A stretch of DNA of 64,000 nt from Selaginella moellendorffii (lineage: Eukaryota; Plantae; Lycopodiophyta), in NCBI RefSeq assembly GCF_000143415.4, contig NW_003314287.1, positions 890,203 through 954,202 on the forward strand, given 5' to 3'. This document shows, one piece after another, positions 17,687-25,294 of the stretch. Under the pieces are notes generated by a model that was not told where the DNA came from, did not search any database, and was given only the letters and a program-made list of their open reading frames with translations. The position numbers were made by a program, and so were the translations under genes. Every line of letters begins with the position of its first letter. The stretch's first letter is position 1.

Positions 17687-19828
17687 TCAGATCCAAGCCC
17701 CAACGCCATTGAGCGGCATTCCCCGCCACCCTAGGATCAAGAACCCCTCCTGGTTCGTCAGCGTATATCCATCCGAGTAGTAGAGCTTGAGAAGAAGGCT
17801 GGCCTGGTTGATCGCCTTGTGGCTCATGGACACGGCTCGGAAGCCCACGCCCTCCATCCTGGCGTTCCACGCCCGCATCGACTCGTGCCGCTCCACGCGC
17901 TCGCTACCCTCGCACGCGATCATGTTGCGCAGCTTCTGCGCCGCGATGAGCTCCTCGAGTTTCTTCCGCCCGGGGAGCGTCCCAGGCATGTGTAGCGACG
18001 CATCGAACGCGTCAAACACGGCCGAGTAGTAGTGGAGGCAGGCCATGAAGCGGTGCATGAAATCGGGGCTGTTGTGATCCGCGTCGTTCTCGGCCATCAC
18101 CACCAGCCTCGGCCGCAGCGAGCGCAGCCCCTGCAGGAACTGGTCGAGGTCACGCTTGAGGAACCGGTGGAACTGGCACAGGCTGTTGACGAGCACCGCC
18201 TCGCCATCGCGGAGCTCCACCATCCCGGCGTGGAAGTCCTCGAGCTCCACTCTGAGAATGCAGTACTCGAAGGGCACCCCCAGCGATCGGGCGCAGTCTA
18301 GAAGCTTGCTCCCGGCCTCCTGGAGGTCGCGCAGCGAGGAGCCAACGGCGGTCATGCGCACGACGGGCGGGCCGCCGGGGCGCATGGCCAGCGACTGGAG
18401 GAAGGAGGGCCACTGCGCGCCATACCAGACCTGGAAGTCGACGACGTGGATGGCGCGCTCGCGGTCGGCGGCCTCGAGCAGGATCTGGTTCATGGTGAGG
18501 TGCGTGAACTTGCCGATGGGGATGTACTCGTAGAAGACCCAAAAGGCCTCGAGCATGTCGCTGCGCGTGGCGCTGCTCAGCTGCTGGAGGCTGTGGTCGG
18601 CGATGAGGCCCTGGAAGTGGGAGGAGCGGGTGTTGCGGCTGAGGCGCGCCACCAGGGCCTCGGTCACGTACGAGGCCAGCCGCTGCATGGGGCTGCCATG
18701 GGGGACGACGAGCGCGCGGAGCTGGACGAGAATGGCGCGGGCGAGGTCGAGGTTGTCGATGGCCACAGCGCCGGCGCAGCTGAGGAGCATCCGGACGAGG
18801 CGGAGCTGCTGGTCCACGGGCTCGAATTTGGGAAAGTTGTTGCTATGGTGTCGCTGCTGCTGCTGCTGCTGCTGCTGTTGACCAAGGTGGTGGTGGTGAT
18901 TGCTGTTGTAATCTCCTCCTCCTGCCCTGGAAACCCCCCCGCCACCCAATGCCACCATCTCTTGCTTCATGGGTTGGATCACTAGCTGCTGATGTTCTTG
19001 GTGATGTTCTTGGGGGTGGTGGTGACGGTGGTGATGGTAATCGAGTTCTTCCAGCTTTGGGTTGATGAAAGCCCGCTGCTCCGACTGGACGCAGACGCTA
19101 GTGGTGGTGGAGCCCGGGCTGAGCTGCGGAGTCCTTGGGTGAGGGGGAGGAGTCCTAGGATTGAAACACGAACCTTGGGAGATGCTGGACAGCCGGGGGT
19201 TTGCCACCGGCAAGGAAATGCCCTGTTGCGGGACCTGCGCCCGTGCCGAGACTGGTGTCAGGGGTGGTAAAGAGCTTGACGACATCTGTCCCGGGGGGCT
19301 GGCGGCACTGCTGCTGCTGCTGCTGTCGATCTCGCCGGCCAGCTCGCCGGCCAGGCGCTCGATCTCCAATTCGCCTGGCGCCCGCTTGGGCAATTGTATC
19401 ATGCCATGGCCCTGCTGCGTGAAACCCGCCAGGAGCTCCTGAATCTCCATAGCGTCGTCCTGATCCCTCTCAAAGAACCCACTATCGAAATCACTGCTGT
19501 GGTAGTGCAGCTGCTGCTGCTCGTGGACGTAATCCAGCACCGAAATCGGCGTTGTCTGGAGTCCATTGCCGCCGAACACGTCCCCGAAATCGCAGCACGG
19601 GTCGATGTAGAGGTGGTGGTCCTGCGCCTGCGAATTGATGGATCCCCAATCCTTGCAGTCGAAGATGGATTGCTGCTGCTGTTGCTGCTGCTGCCAGTCG
19701 GCGATTGGGTCGGCGAGGAAGAGATCGCTCTCGATGAACATGGTTGACGCTAGCTCCTCCGCCACTCCACCGCACTCACCTCTCGTCGATCCACCCCCGC
19801 CGTAGACCACTGCTCCTAGAGATCCCAT
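17687..19828 (-). CDS. GRAS-family transcriptional regulator (DLT/SCL28- or RAM1-related), intronless
   Basis: 713-aa ORF with a disordered poly-Q/H N-terminus, LHRI (LLSCAGAV...PMQRLASYVTEAL), IHVVDF (VHIID), QWPSFLQSLA, PFEY, RVERHE and terminal GW...GAW. Confidence 0.96.
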   Translation of the reverse strand: MGSLGAVVYGGGGSTRGECGGVAEELASTMFIESDLFLADPIADWQQQQQQQQSIFDCKDWGSINSQAQDHHLYIDPCCDFGDVFGGNGLQTTPISVLDYVHEQQQLHYHSSDFDSGFFERDQDDAMEIQELLAGFTQQGHGMIQLPKRAPGELEIERLAGELAGEIDSSSSSSAASPPGQMSSSSLPPLTPVSARAQVPQQGISLPVANPRLSSISQGSCFNPRTPPPHPRTPQLSPGSTTTSVCVQSEQRAFINPKLEELDYHHHRHHHPQEHHQEHQQLVIQPMKQEMVALGGGGVSRAGGGDYNSNHHHHLGQQQQQQQQQRHHSNNFPKFEPVDQQLRLVRMLLSCAGAVAIDNLDLARAILVQLRALVVPHGSPMQRLASYVTEALVARLSRNTRSSHFQGLIADHSLQQLSSATRSDMLEAFWVFYEYIPIGKFTHLTMNQILLEAADRERAIHVVDFQVWYGAQWPSFLQSLAMRPGGPPVVRMTAVGSSLRDLQEAGSKLLDCARSLGVPFEYCILRVELEDFHAGMVELRDGEAVLVNSLCQFHRFLKRDLDQFLQGLRSLRPRLVVMAENDADHNSPDFMHRFMACLHYYSAVFDAFDASLHMPGTLPGRKKLEELIAAQKLRNMIACEGSERVERHESMRAWNARMEGVGFRAVSMSHKAINQASLLLKLYYSDGYTLTNQEGFLILGWRGMPLNGVGAWI

Positions 19829-21412: not shown

Positions 21413-22460
21413 TGATACGCCCTCACGCCCTCCTTTTCGTGTAGATTGGGGGGGAGGGGGGGCGCCGGGGGATTTTTTGTTTCTTTGTTTGCTGTTGAAT
21501 CGCCAACAAGTGATATTGTGCCATGGACAGAAAAATGACGGAAAAAAAGATTAAACTAGATTGATTTATTTTTCAACGTGGGGCCTCTCTTGTGGTTTTT
21601 AGTATGGGTGCTCCAATTTGTTTTTTCCTTCTTTCATTTCTTTTGGCTGTAAAGCAATTCCACAACCCCATCTCTCTTTCTTGATTCGAAGAGCCGCTTG
21701 TGTGTATGGAGTGGACATCGTAGGAGCTCGCCACCTCGCATCCCATAAAGCTCATAAAATTTTGCTCGAATTTGATGCACCTAAAGGTTAAATTGTACAC
21801 GAAAGGTACCGTGTGGGAGATCTCCTTATTATAATGTTTTTTTAGCTTTATGAAATCAAAGAACTCAGATAGATAGATATGTTTTAAGTCCCGTTTAGGC
21901 CTGGGACCATACTAAAATTTGCTAATGTTTTCTGATAAAAAGCAAAAAGATTCATCCAAAACCAAATCCACAGAGAAGTTCCCTTTTCCATTTTTTTTAA
22001 TTTTCTTTCCCTCCGAGAGCGACTTTGTTATGGATGACGCACCACCAAAGCACGCGAAGGTCTCGTATATATTTTTCTCTATGTATATATATTCTTCTAT
22101 ATTTTTCATGTCATAACATTAGAGCTCGTCTCAGCTCATTCATCAGTGTGTTGTCCTTGTCTCGTCGATTTATACTGTGTGATCTTCATCGAATAGACGA
22201 GGGACGCGGCAACAACTCGGATAATAAAAAGCGATATTAACAAAGTACCTCTCTTTTCTTTTCTCGTGAGAAACATCCATAATCACGCAATCTTTCAAGA
22301 GCATCCCTTCTCTCTTTTATAAATCTCCACAATCATCTCAATTTCCGGAATCTTTCTCTCAGTGGTCTGCAAGTAGATTGATTAAGCTGGTTAGTGGAAC
22401 AACACAAGAATCATATGCTTACCAGTGCCAAGTGAAAGGAAAATAAAAACTGTAGCGGAT

Positions 22461-24234
22461 TTACTTGAGTAGCATGCCGATTTGATCCTTTAGACTGCTC
22501 TTCTTCTTTGGTTTTGGCTGGATGGACCTTGTTTCCTCGATTGACTGTGGTGCCTCGACTGCCACTCTCGCCGGTGCTTCCATCACATCCCTTGGAACTA
22601 TTGCTGGCCTTGGAACTACTTCTGGCTCGGGCCTTTGCAAGTTAGCTTCCATCGCTTGAGGGGGAGCCGGAGCCTTCTTTGGGACGTAGCCTCCAAAGAG
22701 CATCCCGAGCATCTCATCCTCGAGAGTGTCAGTTGACACGAGCCTCGCAGCACCTGAAACAGTTTGCTCCTCTTGAGCTCGATCGCTTCCCGCGAACCCG
22801 GCCTCATCCCTTCCAACAGTGCTGACTCTTTCATGCTCGTAGCTTTCCCTGGTCGGTGCTTTACTACTCGAGCTTCCCGACTCATTCTCTGCTGCAGTAG
22901 CAGCTGACTTGCTTTTCCACCCGCTCAAAGCAAACATGGAATCGTTCAGCTTCGCTTTTTTCTTTGCTGGCTGGGTGGAAGTTCCGTTCACGTTGCCGGC
23001 GGCTAATGGCTTGGGGCTGTACTGTTTGTCTTCCACATTGGTCGTGAGGATAGCCTCAGGGCTGTCCTCGTGGTCAAGATTCTTTTAAAAAGGAAAGAGG
23101 CCACAGTTATCCGAGAGAAAACGAGAAAAAAAAGAGAGAGTACAATACCTGGTGAGCTATGCACATAAGTTCGTCCAGTGTCGCGTCTGTAGCCTCCTCG
23201 TCCTCCACGACTTTCTTTAGTTTCCGCTTGCTTTTCTTGGTGGCCTGGTCCTTTCCCACCTCGGGGGCCGGAGCTCGCTTGCAAAAAGCCTCGAAAGCTC
23301 CCTTCATGTCCACCCCACCGCTGGTATTTTCTGGCAAAGCCTCGTCACTCTCGGCTTTTCTCGATCTCCGCTGCGCTGCTTTAACAGCATCTGCACCTGG
23401 AGCTTCGTCAGCTGCTTTGTTCGCGGGTTTGTCTTTGCCTTGGTCGCTATCATCTCCCCTGTTCCTGGTTTGACGAGCGGTTGCTTTCTTAGCAGGTTTC
23501 ACTGGCTCCTCGTCATCTATAACTTCTTCCTCCGCGTCGTCAACTTTTTGCTTGCCTTTGGAACTCTTGGCTTTCCTGGCAGCGGGAGCTTTTCTCCCGG
23601 CGGAAGTCTGGGGCTCGTCGCCATCCTCCTCTTCCACCTTTTGCTTCTTTGATGCTCGCGCCTTCTTCGGCTTTTCGACGGCGGCAGCAGTCATCCATGC
23701 CGGCAGAGCTCGCCGTGCCCCCGGATCCGGAGTTACCTTCACTGGATTTCTCACCCATTCGATCGTTGGTAGTGTCTCTAGATCCTCCTCTTCCTCTCCT
23801 TTGATCTCGCTAGACGAAGCACCGTTTTTCAAGCAATGGAGCTGCACGGAAAAGAGTCTAGAACACTTTCAACCAAGAGGAAGAAACTAACGTGATTCGC
23901 GCGGTGAAGTAGCAAAGCTATGACGTGCTTACACATTCCCCTTCCAGCGGGACAGGAGCAGCGATACGTTGGTTGCTTGGATGCATCTGATGGATCGATG
24001 CTAATGCTCACATAGTAGCTATCCCCTGGACCGGAGCCTAGAAGCGACAGGAAAAGCGATCGATCACATCACCAGCGAAAAAAAAAAAACCTCACCTTCA
24101 CAGACAGCCGACGCCTTCTCGCAATCCTCCCCTACAAATTCCACCTCGTGGAGCTTCTTGGCCTTGATCAGCTCTTTCCCGCGCTTGAAAGCCGCATCGT
24201 TCACGAGCGCCTTGACGGAGGCCTCGTCTTCCAT
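22461..24234 (-). CDS. SWIM zinc-finger protein with a long disordered tail carrying an R-x-x-P-x-W Ku-binding-like motif (MRI/CYREN-like)
   Basis: Four in-frame exons 24234-24096, 24037-23892, 23841-23149 and 23081-22461 with GT-AG introns. Motifs: CSCPAGRGMCKH (SWIM), RRALPAWM, ATLDELMCIA, C-terminal KKKSSLKDQIGMLLK. Confidence 0.85.
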
Positions 24235-24293
24235 CGCCCCAGAGCTTCTTCCCTTCTGCCCTAATGTAATCGTCAAGGGTTTATAAGAACAAC

Positions 24294-24304
24294 ATCCAAC
24301 GGTC
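24294..24304. promoter_or_regulatory. MSA (mitosis-specific activator) element in a 161-bp bidirectional promoter
   Basis: ATCCAACGGTC matches the YCYAACGGYY consensus. It lies 60 bp from the SWIM gene ATG, next to a TATA-like TTATAAA. Confidence 0.55.
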
Positions 24305-24395
24305 ACGGTCGGAGGGGAATATTCCGCTAGATCTTGCTTAAATATTTAGGTAGCGAGGAAGGGCTTTTTTGTGGATCCAAGAGGGCGGCGAGACA

Positions 24396-25294
24396 ATGCA
24401 GGAGATCAAGAATGTGTCGCTGCTCGTCGTGATCTCCACCACCGTGCTCTTCCTCGTCGCGTTTGGCCTGGCGGTCGGAGCCGAATCGAAGCGCAGCACG
24501 GTATGTAGTGTGAAATTCTAGCCTTTCCGCTCCAAATCCTTGCCTAGAATGGGGAATTCTAGCCTCCCCGATGCCGCATTCTTCGCTGGCATCGCGAAAT
24601 ATCGCCAGAGATCCAGGAAATCGCTGATGATTCTTGGCTGTCGATCGATTTCCAGGCGGCCGTGGGGCACGATGACACTGGGACGCTCACCTATTGCGCC
24701 TACGGCAAGGATATCTCCACCGGGCTGGGAGCCGGCGCCTTCTTGTTCGTGCTGCTCGCTCAGGGGATTATAATGGGCGCTACCAAGTGTCTGTGCTGTG
24801 GAGCGCCTCTCAGCGACGGCAAACCAAGAACTCTAGCGATCTTCTTTTTCATATTCTCATGGTAAGCCATCTTTGTCTACTTTGTCCTTGCTTGGTTTTC
24901 TTACGAGCTCTCTTTTTTTCCCAGGATTTGCTTCTGCATTGCACAGATCTGCCTTGCCGGAGCCTCCGCTCGCAACTCCATCCACACGAATGGATTCGCG
25001 ACTCCAAACGAGCCTCTGGATTGCGTGGAGCTCCGGAGGGGGGTGTTTGGCGCCGCCGCCGCCTTCATCTTCTTCACCATGCTGCTCAGCGAGGCGTACT
25101 ACGTTTTCATCGTCAAGGCCAGAGAGGGCTCGTGGCAAGCTTTCGATGTCCGGGACTCGTTCAACTTCCGAGACTCTTTCAAGTTCAGTCGCAACTTCAA
25201 CCTCCGCGACTCCTTCAATTTCCGGGGTGGTGGATCCGTCGGCATGACTCCAACGGGAACTTCAGCCGGGCCTGGAACTGGAACTGCAAGCTAG
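24396..25294 (+). CDS. DUF1218 (MWL-like) multi-pass membrane protein
   Basis: Exons ~24396-24500, ~24656-24861 and ~24925-25294. Motifs: AFGLAVGAESKRST, YCAY...TGLG, TKCLCCG, C..LRRGVFGAAAAF. Confidence 0.88.

What the first reader, a model, noticed from the sequence alone, without database searches (positions are those of the whole stretch)
22461..24304. Candidate plant MRI/CYREN-like NHEJ regulator fused to a SWIM domain, with an MSA promoter element
Seen: after an N-terminal SWIM module, the disordered tail carries short motifs in order: RRALPAWM (23692-23715), the helix ATLDELMCIAHQNL, DEMLGMLFG and a terminal basic-hydrophobic KKKSSLKDQIGMLLK. Known: R-x-x-P-x-W is the APLF-type Ku80-binding motif (APLF, WRN, MRI/CYREN). 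Animal MRI/CYREN is a disordered protein with this motif, a central helix (MNEAEIVDVALGIL) and a C-terminal XLF-like motif. The SWIM module (FKRG..L...V.......A..EG...Y.VSI...CSCP...CKHVIALLL) resembles the bacterial SWIM/SNF2-N type more than MULE SWIMs. Inference: this is an unannotated plant Ku adaptor that gained a Zn-binding module. The perfect MSA element 60 bp upstream suggests G2/M control, paralleling the cell-cycle role of CYREN.
Basis: partly seen in the sequence, partly recalled or inferred. Interest (0 to 1): 0.82.

Follow-up and report, generated by a model that had tools for sequence, protein, structure and literature searches.

The report
Spikemoss SWIM protein with Ku-binding-like motif
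A real, expressed but already catalogued gene of the spikemoss Selaginella moellendorffii encodes a zinc-finger head and a long floppy tail; the tail carries a very good copy of the short peptide that animal DNA-repair helpers use to grip the Ku protein, but no relatives were found, so Ku binding remains an untested idea.

Summary
A four-exon minus-strand gene (CDS 24234..22461) encodes 532 aa. Spliced contigs from four studies confirm all three coding introns and link the SWIM exons to the tail.

The gene is not unannotated. It is S. moellendorffii SELMODRAFT_415181 (XP_002975138.1), filed as a hypothetical SWIM-domain protein. The second haplotype carries a 97% identical allele, which the scan noted separately (s1-410816).

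- **Head:** residues 1-105 form a SWIM module. It scores above the Pfam threshold, and its predicted fold matches bacterial stand-alone and SNF2-associated SWIM units.
- **Tail:** the rest is predicted disordered.
- **Motif:** RRALPAWM fits the strict APLF-type Ku-binding pattern R-x-[LIC]-P-x-W-[ML], not only R-x-x-P-x-W. By chance this occurs in about 2 of 10,000 shuffles of the tail, yet several chance copies are expected per proteome.
- **Promoter:** a full MSA element lies 10 nt upstream of the TATA box, in a 163-bp promoter shared with a divergent gene.

MRI/CYREN kinship is not supported:
- No sequence relatives were found anywhere.
- The C-terminus lacks the defining Phe.
- The protein is large and has a folded head.

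Motif conservation could not be tested. I put Ku80 binding at about 0.3.

The parts
24295..24305 (+). MSA (mitosis-specific activator) consensus TCCAACGGTCA, inverted relative to the gene, in the 163-bp divergent promoter
   Evidence: It is the only match in the window against 0.11 expected. It is retained in haplotype 2. The consensus is as given in PMC5405339.
24280..24285 (-). TATAAA box, about 20-30 nt upstream of the contig 5' ends
   Evidence: Regex scan. Contigs end at 24250-24263.
24096..24234 (-). CDS exon 1 (ATG 24234-24232), covering residues 1-46 plus the first base of codon 47: the N-terminal helices and first strand of the SWIM module
23892..24037 (-). CDS exon 2, residues 47-95: SWIM strands, the CxCx6CxH core (C73, C75, C82, H84 at 23960-23925) and the start of the helix
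   Evidence: Pfam PF04434 at E 3.6e-7. Junctions are confirmed.
23149..23841 (-). CDS exon 3, residues 96-326: end of the SWIM helix, then a disordered K/E/A-rich tail
23692..23715 (-). RRALPAWM (residues 138-145), an APLF-type Ku-binding-motif-like peptide
   Evidence: It matches the strict pattern. Published KBM peptides for comparison are in PMC4831024. It is identical in both haplotypes.
23149..23178 (-). Predicted short helix LDELMCIAHQ (residues 317-326)
   Evidence: AF2 single-sequence helix 317-326 with pLDDT about 50.
22461..23081 (-). CDS exon 4, residues 327-532 plus the TAA stop (22463-22461): disordered tail
22692..22718 (-). DEMLGMLFG (residues 448-456), containing G-M-L-F
22464..22508 (-). 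C-terminal basic patch plus amphipathic helix KKKSSLKDQIGMLLK (residues 518-532)
   Evidence: AF2 helix 523-531, the best-scored part of the model at pLDDT 73-79. It lacks the Phe of XLF-like motifs.
22367..22422 (-). 56-nt intron in the 3' UTR; the transcript runs on to about 22185
   Evidence: The joint 22366/23423-type skip of 56 nt with CT..AC ends is seen in 4 runs.

Best explanation
This is an expressed, lineage-restricted Selaginella moellendorffii gene for a tethering protein.

**Architecture.** A folded ~105-residue SWIM zinc-finger head, of the bacterial stand-alone/SNF2-associated type, is joined to a ~430-residue disordered, lysine/glutamate/alanine-rich tail. The tail carries nuclear-localisation-like basic clusters and a few hydrophobic short linear motifs.

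**Proposed mechanism.**
- The internal peptide R139-A-L-P-A-W-M145 docks into the alpha4-alpha5 groove of the Ku80 von Willebrand A domain, folding on binding as the A-KBMs of APLF, WRN and MRI do.
- The SWIM head then brings a second partner (DNA or a protein) to Ku-bound ends.
- The other tail motifs could add avidity or self-association. These are the helix at 317-326, the two G-M-L-[FL] elements and the C-terminal basic-amphipathic helix.
- The MSA element beside the TATA box suggests MYB3R-driven G2/M transcription.

**Shown:** the gene, its transcript, the SWIM domain, predicted tail disorder, the motif match and the promoter element.

**Inferred:** nuclear location, Ku80 binding, the role of the SWIM head and the cell-cycle timing.

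The general picture of a SWIM head with a motif-bearing tether I hold at about 0.6. The specific Ku80 link I hold at about 0.3, and that is the confidence given.
For: - **Motif fit.** The motif satisfies R-x-[LIC]-P-x-W-[ML], derived from experimentally validated peptides: WRN-nA ..QQRKCPEWMNVQ, WRN-cA ..RKRRLPVWFAK and MRI-A ..KTRVLPSWLTA (PMC4831024).
- **Contact residues.** The WRN contacts R13, C15, W18 and M19 (PMC13377182) all have counterparts here.
- **Met after Trp.** This residue is present in APLF and in MRI of most species and raises affinity more than 30-fold.
- **Following residues.** T-A-A-A-V is helix-prone, in line with the short helix MRI forms on binding.
- **Rarity.** The strict motif occurs in 1.75e-4 of tail shuffles, and it uses one of only three Trp in the protein.
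- **Context.** It lies in a stretch with pLDDT<50, 43 residues after the SWIM module, and is followed by basic clusters at 154-163.
- **Alleles and runs.** It is unchanged between the haplotypes, and no variant was seen at 23692-23715 in four runs.
- **Expression.** The gene is expressed and correctly spliced in 4 studies.
- **Promoter.** The MSA full consensus is unique in 64 kb. The whole 163-bp promoter is identical between haplotypes that differ by 1.9% overall.
- **Plant precedent.** Arabidopsis Ku is reported to interact with the WRN-like exonuclease WEX (review PMC7761550). A peptide-binding role of Ku in plants is therefore plausible.
Against: - **Weak specificity.** R-x-x-P-x-W occurs in more than 600 human proteins (PMC4831024).
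- **Look-elsewhere effect.** From amino-acid frequencies I estimate about 1e-6 per residue for the strict pattern. That gives several chance copies per plant proteome, and the scan read thousands of windows of this genome.
- **No conservation test.** No homologue exists in the searches made, so the motif has no conservation support.
- **Weak constraint.** dN/dS between the two haplotypes is about 0.5 (14 non-synonymous against 8 synonymous changes).
- **No plant precedent for the motif.** No A-KBM protein is known in plants, and APLF is reported as not identified there.
- **Ku80 unexamined.** Selaginella Ku80 could not be fetched, so conservation of the groove is unknown.
- **Sparse repair signals.** There is only one S/T-Q site and no other repair-related domain.
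- **Promoter ambiguity.** The MSA may belong to the divergent DUF1218 gene.
Confidence: 0.3

Rival explanations
1. The Ku-like peptide is a chance match. The protein is a lineage-specific SWIM-domain nuclear or chromatin protein whose disordered tail binds other, unknown partners. The SWIM head could, for example, serve as a protein-recognition module, as in ZSWIM8-type ubiquitin-ligase receptors, or as a nucleic-acid binder.
For: - Several chance copies of the strict pattern are expected per proteome (estimate built and amino-acid frequencies).
- More than 600 human proteins carry the core motif.
- No relatives were found, so there is no conservation evidence.
- dN/dS is about 0.5.
- The SWIM head aligns with the human ZSWIM8 SWIM region at E 0.05.
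- Nothing else in the protein points to DNA repair.
Against: - The match extends beyond the core to W+1 through W+3 and to a second basic residue.
- The motif sits in a disordered, basic context, where such motifs work.
- Trp is rare in this tail.
Confidence: 0.45
2. It is a mitotic (G2/M) protein. Transcription is driven by MYB3R through the MSA element, and RRAL (138-141) acts as an APC/C destruction-box core that removes the protein at mitotic exit. On this reading there is no link to Ku.
For: - The MSA full consensus lies next to the TATA box.
- RRAL is the only RxxL in the protein. From memory, it resembles the start of plant B-type cyclin D-boxes.
Against: - The usual D-box pattern R..L..[LIVM] is not met, because position 7 is Trp.
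- There is no KEN box and no CDK consensus site.
- The MSA may serve the neighbouring gene.
Confidence: 0.1
3. It is a young, weakly constrained gene. An old SWIM module was joined to a fast-drifting low-complexity tail that has no specific motif-based function.
For: - No homologue of the tail was found among 1.84 billion representatives.
- dN/dS is about 0.5.
- The two alleles received different composition-driven names in RefSeq.
Against: - The gene is expressed in every one of four studies, with four precisely spliced introns.
- The reading frame is intact in both haplotypes.
- The promoter is invariant between haplotypes.
- The few hydrophobic islands in the tail are untouched by the 14 allelic substitutions, although about one hit would be expected by chance.
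Confidence: 0.15

Closest known systems
APLF-type Ku-binding motifs (A-KBM) of APLF, WRN and MRI/CYREN
   Same: It has one or two basic residues, R at W-5, an aliphatic residue at W-3, Pro at W-2, an invariant Trp and Met at W+1, and it lies in a disordered region. Six of nine positions are identical to the published MRI-A peptide.
   Different: The motif is in a plant, in a protein with no relatives, and its binding is untested. It is internal rather than N-terminal as in MRI and WRN-nA, and it is attached to a SWIM head, a combination no known KBM protein has.
MRI/CYREN (vertebrate NHEJ modulator)
   Same: Both are largely disordered. Both show the order A-KBM-like motif, then a hydrophobic helix, then a basic C-terminal motif. 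MRI is itself poorly conserved.
   Different: No sequence similarity was detected. This protein is 532 aa against 157 aa and has a folded SWIM domain. The C-terminus lacks the conserved Phe of XLF-like motifs (GMLLK against GLFS/IFFS). No equivalent of the beta-strand plus helix multimerisation domain has been shown.
Bacterial stand-alone SWIM proteins and the SWIM/SNF2_assoc N-terminal module of bacterial SNF2 helicases
   Same: The predicted fold matches over residues 1-105 at TM 0.76-0.82. The layout is the same: two helices, four strands, CxCxnCxH, then a long helix.
   Different: This gene is eukaryotic, with two spliceosomal introns inside the module. There is no helicase, and the head is followed by a long disordered tail. 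The comparison is between predicted models only.
ZSWIM8-type eukaryotic SWIM domains
   Same: phmmer aligns residues 12-97 with ZSWIM8 residues 128-212, including the F-x-R-G..L lead-in.
   Different: The match is weak (E 0.05). ZSWIM8 is an 1866-aa ubiquitin-ligase receptor, and no other part is shared.

Membership tests
APLF-type Ku-binding motif (A-KBM) | Basic patch, then R-x-[LIC]-P-x-W-[MLF] | tested here: met
   R138-R139-A-L-P-A-W144-M145, compared with validated peptides in PMC4831024 and contact residues in PMC13377182.
APLF-type Ku-binding motif (A-KBM) | Located in an intrinsically disordered segment | tested here: met
   AF2 gives pLDDT<50 over residues 102-159. The Atlas model has mean pLDDT 0.44. 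These are predictions only.
APLF-type Ku-binding motif (A-KBM) | Motif conserved among orthologues while the flanks drift | tested here: inconclusive
   No orthologue was found. Only the second haplotype was available, and the motif is identical there.
APLF-type Ku-binding motif (A-KBM) | Trp-dependent binding to the Ku80 vWA groove | not testable with these tools
MRI/CYREN | Detectable sequence homology to the family | tested here: not met
   A Pfam scan at E<=10 gives only SWIM. The exhaustive search of 1.84 billion representatives returned only the protein itself.
MRI/CYREN | C-terminal XLF-like motif: basic patch followed by a conserved Phe at the extreme C-terminus | tested here: not met
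   The protein ends KPKKKSSLKDQIGMLLK. The basic patch is present but there is no Phe. Published motifs end GLFS or IFFS.
MRI/CYREN | Central multimerisation domain (beta-strand plus helix, residues 49-81 of MRI1) | tested here: inconclusive
   Only a short helix at 317-326 is predicted, at pLDDT about 50. No similarity could be measured. The domain is described in preprint 10.64898/2026.07.22.740027.
MRI/CYREN | Small, fully disordered microprotein with the A-KBM at the N-terminus | tested here: not met
   The protein is 532 aa with a folded SWIM head, and the motif is at residues 138-145.
SWIM zinc finger (PF04434) | CxCxnCxH signature and a Pfam score above the gathering threshold | tested here: met
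   The ligands are C73, C75, C82 and H84. The score is 27.7-30 bits against a cut-off of 19.6.
SWIM zinc finger (PF04434) | Strands followed by a helix carrying the last two ligands | tested here: met
   AF2 predicts strands 31-33, 41-46, 53-59 and 70-74, then helix 79-102. The Atlas gives TM 0.76-0.82 to SWIM clusters. These are predicted models.
MSA-controlled (MYB3R target) G2/M gene | Full consensus (T/C)C(T/C)AACGG(T/C)(T/C)A close to the transcription start | tested here: met
   The element lies at 24295-24305, is unique in the window, and sits 10 nt from the TATA box. The consensus is from PMC5405339.
MSA-controlled (MYB3R target) G2/M gene | G2/M-phase peak of mRNA | not testable with these tools
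   The runs are kept as contigs, and depth is not informative.

The most novel reading that the evidence does not exclude
This would be the first APLF-type Ku80 ligand outside animals. On this reading a lineage-specific, G2/M-transcribed adaptor uses RALPAWM to dock on the plant Ku80 vWA groove, and its bacterial-type SWIM head brings a second partner to DNA ends. That would show that the Ku peptide-docking system is older and more widely reused than the animal NHEJ accessory factors suggest.
Probability: 0.25. Interest if true: 0.7.

Novelty: new variant of a known kind. Interest (0 to 1): 0.4.

Why it matters
In plants only the core end-joining factors, and recently PAXX, are characterised. 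Reviews state that APLF and similar accessory factors have not been identified there.

A plant protein that grips Ku80 through the APLF-type peptide would give a handle on how plant end joining is regulated. That bears on genome editing and on transgene integration.

The claim is cheap to test with one peptide and one Trp-to-Ala control. If it fails, what remains is an ordinary orphan SWIM-domain protein. The lesson would then be that even the strict Ku-binding pattern turns up by chance in a proteome-wide reading.

Tried and rejected
- **Word search, exon 3 alone.** No hit; only 127-404-aa candidates were visible.
- **Exhaustive HMMER search, exon 3.** It returned the protein itself and one 37-bit hit, P0002. 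That hit is a Cys-rich repeat protein matching only the low-complexity part, so I rejected it as spurious.
- **Word searches, full length and residues 1-160.** Only the protein itself was found.
- **ESM Atlas search of the tail.** No feature hit, and all structural rows had TM<0.2. Rejected.
- **PDB sequence searches.**
  - The motif region gave only a chance hit at E 1.3.
  - The C-terminus gave nothing.
I took the KBM sequences from the Methods of PMC4831024 instead.
- **Foldseek of the AF2 model against the PDB.** Nothing at E<=0.001. The model is too poor (mean pLDDT 44), so these rows are not used.
- **NCBIfam scan of the head.** Noise only.
- **Pattern scans.** No D-box, KEN, PIP-box, APIM or CDK site in the protein, and no E2F, SOG1, telo-box or site II element in the promoter.
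- **Literature.** Searches for SWIM together with Ku gave no paper. The Arabidopsis WEX-Ku paper (PMC1310904) is not held.
- **Bacterial promoter/terminator scan.** Irrelevant for a plant gene.
Full report
**1. What is there**

Reading the minus strand and assembling the exons gives a four-exon CDS: 24234-24096, 24037-23892, 23841-23149 and 23081-22461. Its introns are canonical GT..AG, of 58, 50 and 67 nt, and the product is 532 aa.

The short introns and 46% G+C suggested a lycophyte. The exhaustive protein search returned a 532-aa database protein identical to the model. It is named SELMODRAFT_415181 / XP_002975138.1 / UniRef D8RVA4 of Selaginella moellendorffii, and UniRef calls it a 'SWIM-type domain-containing protein'. 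The gene model is therefore already in the databases, and only its function is unassigned.

A second cluster member, P0003 (SELMODRAFT_417371), lies on scaffold GL377599.1 between the same neighbours: PPP4R2, DUF1218 and GRAS. It is the allele on the other haplotype of this assembly. The scan's note s1-410816, on 'another piece' of 1771 letters, is the same reading made on that allele. It is not independent support.

**2. Transcript**

I laid contigs of four runs from four studies on 21900-24700.

- They show all three coding junctions with CT..AC ends on the + strand.
- One contig joins exon 1, exon 2 and 43 nt of exon 3.
- Another, of 1245 nt, joins exons 3 and 4.
- There is an additional 56-nt intron in the 3' UTR (22367-22422), 38 nt after the stop codon.
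- The contigs break only where the two alleles differ (23736-23798).
- The 5' ends lie at 24250-24263 and the 3' end at about 22185.

**3. The head**

Pfam finds only SWIM (PF04434; 27.7-30 bits against a cut-off of 19.6). The ligands are C73, C75, C82 and H84.

AF2 without an alignment is poor overall (mean pLDDT 44). It still gives the expected layout: helices 4-11 and 14-25, four strands between 31 and 74, and helix 79-102.

The ESM Atlas model of residues 1-105 superposes at TM 0.76-0.82 on bacterial SWIM family proteins and on the SWIM/SNF2_assoc N-terminal module of bacterial SNF2 helicases. The nearest clusters by language-model features are 93-109-aa bacterial SWIM proteins at score 0.90.

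The comparison is between predicted models, and only clusters of 50 or more members are searched. A weak phmmer hit to the SWIM region of human ZSWIM8 (E 0.05) shows that the F-x-R-G lead-in is not exclusive to bacteria.

**4. The tail**

Residues ~105-532 are rich in A, K, E, S, P and D. They are predicted disordered, with a few exceptions:

| Helix | pLDDT |
|---|---|
| 274-284, 295-308, 317-326 | about 50 |
| C-terminal 523-531 | 73-79, the best part of the model |

The tail contains five K-K/R-x-K/R clusters, three Trp, one T-Q site, and no KEN, PIP, APIM or CDK consensus.

**5. The Ku-like motif**

RRALPAWM is residues 138-145 (23715-23692). The Methods of Grundy et al. list the validated peptides (PMC4831024):

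| Peptide | Sequence |
|---|---|
| WRN-nA | LETTAAQQRKCPEWMNVQ |
| WRN-cA | TSSAERKRRLPVWFAK |
| MRI-A | SETKTRVLPSWLTA |

Aligned on P-x-W, the Selaginella peptide has R at W-5 like all three. It has L at W-3 like MRI and WRN-cA, Pro at W-2, Trp, Met at W+1 like WRN-nA, and T-A at W+2/+3 like MRI. That makes 6 of 9 positions identical to human MRI.

Structural and NMR work names the contact residues. These are R13, C15, W18 and M19 of WRN against Ku80 D106/D109, I112 and Q119 (PMC13377182). Met after the Trp is found in APLF and in MRI of most species, and it raises affinity more than 30-fold (preprint 10.64898/2026.07.22.740027).

**6. How much is chance**

In 200,000 shuffles of the tail the frequencies were as follows:

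| Pattern | Frequency |
|---|---|
| Core motif | 1.2% |
| Strict pattern | 0.0175% |
| Strict pattern with a second basic residue | 0.006% |

The six-frame translation of the whole window has nine core matches but only this one strict match.

For this protein alone the match is therefore unlikely to be chance. Two points cut the other way:
- Grundy et al. found the core pattern in more than 600 human proteins.
- From ordinary amino-acid frequencies, the strict pattern has about 1e-6 probability per residue. That gives several chance copies in a proteome of 20-35 thousand proteins. This is my estimate and was not measured on the Selaginella proteome.

Since the scan has read thousands of windows of this genome, finding one such copy somewhere is expected. 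The context raises the odds: a disordered basic region, a probable nuclear protein, and a rare Trp. It does not settle the matter.

**7. Conservation**

This is the weak point.

- The exhaustive HMMER search of 1.84 billion representatives with the motif-bearing exon returned only the protein itself and one spurious 37-bit hit.
- Word searches with exon 3, the full length and residues 1-160 found only the protein itself.
- The Atlas found nothing for the tail.

The two haplotypes differ at 14 of 532 residues and at 8 synonymous codons, giving dN/dS of about 0.5. None of the 14 changes falls in the proposed motifs. About one would be expected there by chance, so this says little.

**8. MRI/CYREN likeness**

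As kinship it fails:
- There is no detectable similarity.
- The size is three times larger, and the head is folded.
- The C-terminus, KPKKKSSLKDQIGMLLK, has a basic patch and a confident helix but lacks the phenylalanine that defines XLF-like motifs. Those end GLFS in XLF and WRN-X and IFFS in MRI-X.

The MRI multimerisation domain is a beta-strand plus helix at residues 49-81. Here there is only a weakly predicted helix at 317-326.

What survives is an analogy of layout: Ku-type motif, then a hydrophobic helix, then a basic C-terminal helix.

**9. Promoter**

TCCAACGGTCA at 24295-24305 matches the whole MSA consensus (T/C)C(T/C)AACGG(T/C)(T/C)A (PMC5405339).

- It is the only match in 64 kb against 0.11 expected.
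- It lies 10 nt upstream of TATAAA (24285-24280) and about 35-45 nt from the transcript 5' ends.
- It is retained in haplotype 2.
- The 163 bp between the two divergent start codons are identical between haplotypes that differ by 1.9% overall. About three differences would be expected, so this is a modest signal.

The element is inverted relative to this gene, and the promoter is shared with a DUF1218 gene starting at 24398. Either gene, or both, may be the target. I could not test G2/M expression.

MSA genes are repressed after DNA damage by repressor MYB3Rs (PMC5608833, abstract). That is not what one expects of an induced repair gene, though it is compatible with a cell-cycle-gated modulator.

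**10. Verdict**

The gene, the single transcript, the SWIM type, the motif and the MSA are real, and the motif is a very good A-KBM look-alike. Membership of MRI/CYREN is not supported, 'unannotated' is wrong, and Ku binding, conservation and cell-cycle control remain untested.

My odds:

| Reading | Probability |
|---|---|
| Ku80 tether | about 0.3 |
| Chance motif in a SWIM-headed protein with other partners | about 0.45 |
| Mitotic protein with a degron | about 0.1 |
| Weakly constrained young gene | about 0.15 |

The first decisive step is a look at Selaginella Ku80, plus a peptide-binding test with a W144A control.

Noticed in passing
window 22367-22422 (minus strand): A 56-nt GT..AG intron lies in the 3' UTR, 38 nt after the stop codon. 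It is spliced out in all four runs laid.
   Followed up: partly
window 24235-24397: A 163-bp bidirectional promoter is shared with a divergent DUF1218-family gene. That gene's ATG is at 24398 on the + strand, and it has a 155-nt intron at 24500-24654 that is confirmed by contigs. The promoter is 100% identical between the two haplotypes, although the region differs by 1.9% overall.
   Followed up: partly
window 22695-22706 and 22467-22478 (residues 452-455 and 528-531): The rare tetrapeptide G-M-L-[F/L] occurs twice in the tail, as LGMLFG and as IGMLLK at the C-terminus. The first copy resembles the G-x-L-F of XLF-like motifs but is internal and sits in an acidic context.
   Followed up: no
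P0001 / P0003 (database records): RefSeq gives the two alleles of this gene different product names, 'ABC transporter F family member 4' and 'protein IWS1 homolog'. Both names apparently come from the K/E-rich composition. Neither is supported by any domain hit.
   Followed up: partly
window 23736-23798: A cluster of five allelic differences splits the transcript assemblies of all four runs into two parallel 123-nt contigs. Both haplotypes are therefore transcribed.
   Followed up: partly
window 17687-19828 (minus strand): A 713-aa intronless ORF lies downstream of the gene. It corresponds to the GRAS-family gene called at the same relative place in haplotype 2 (L001 8359-9771). A PPP4R2-family gene lies beyond the DUF1218 gene.
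   Followed up: no
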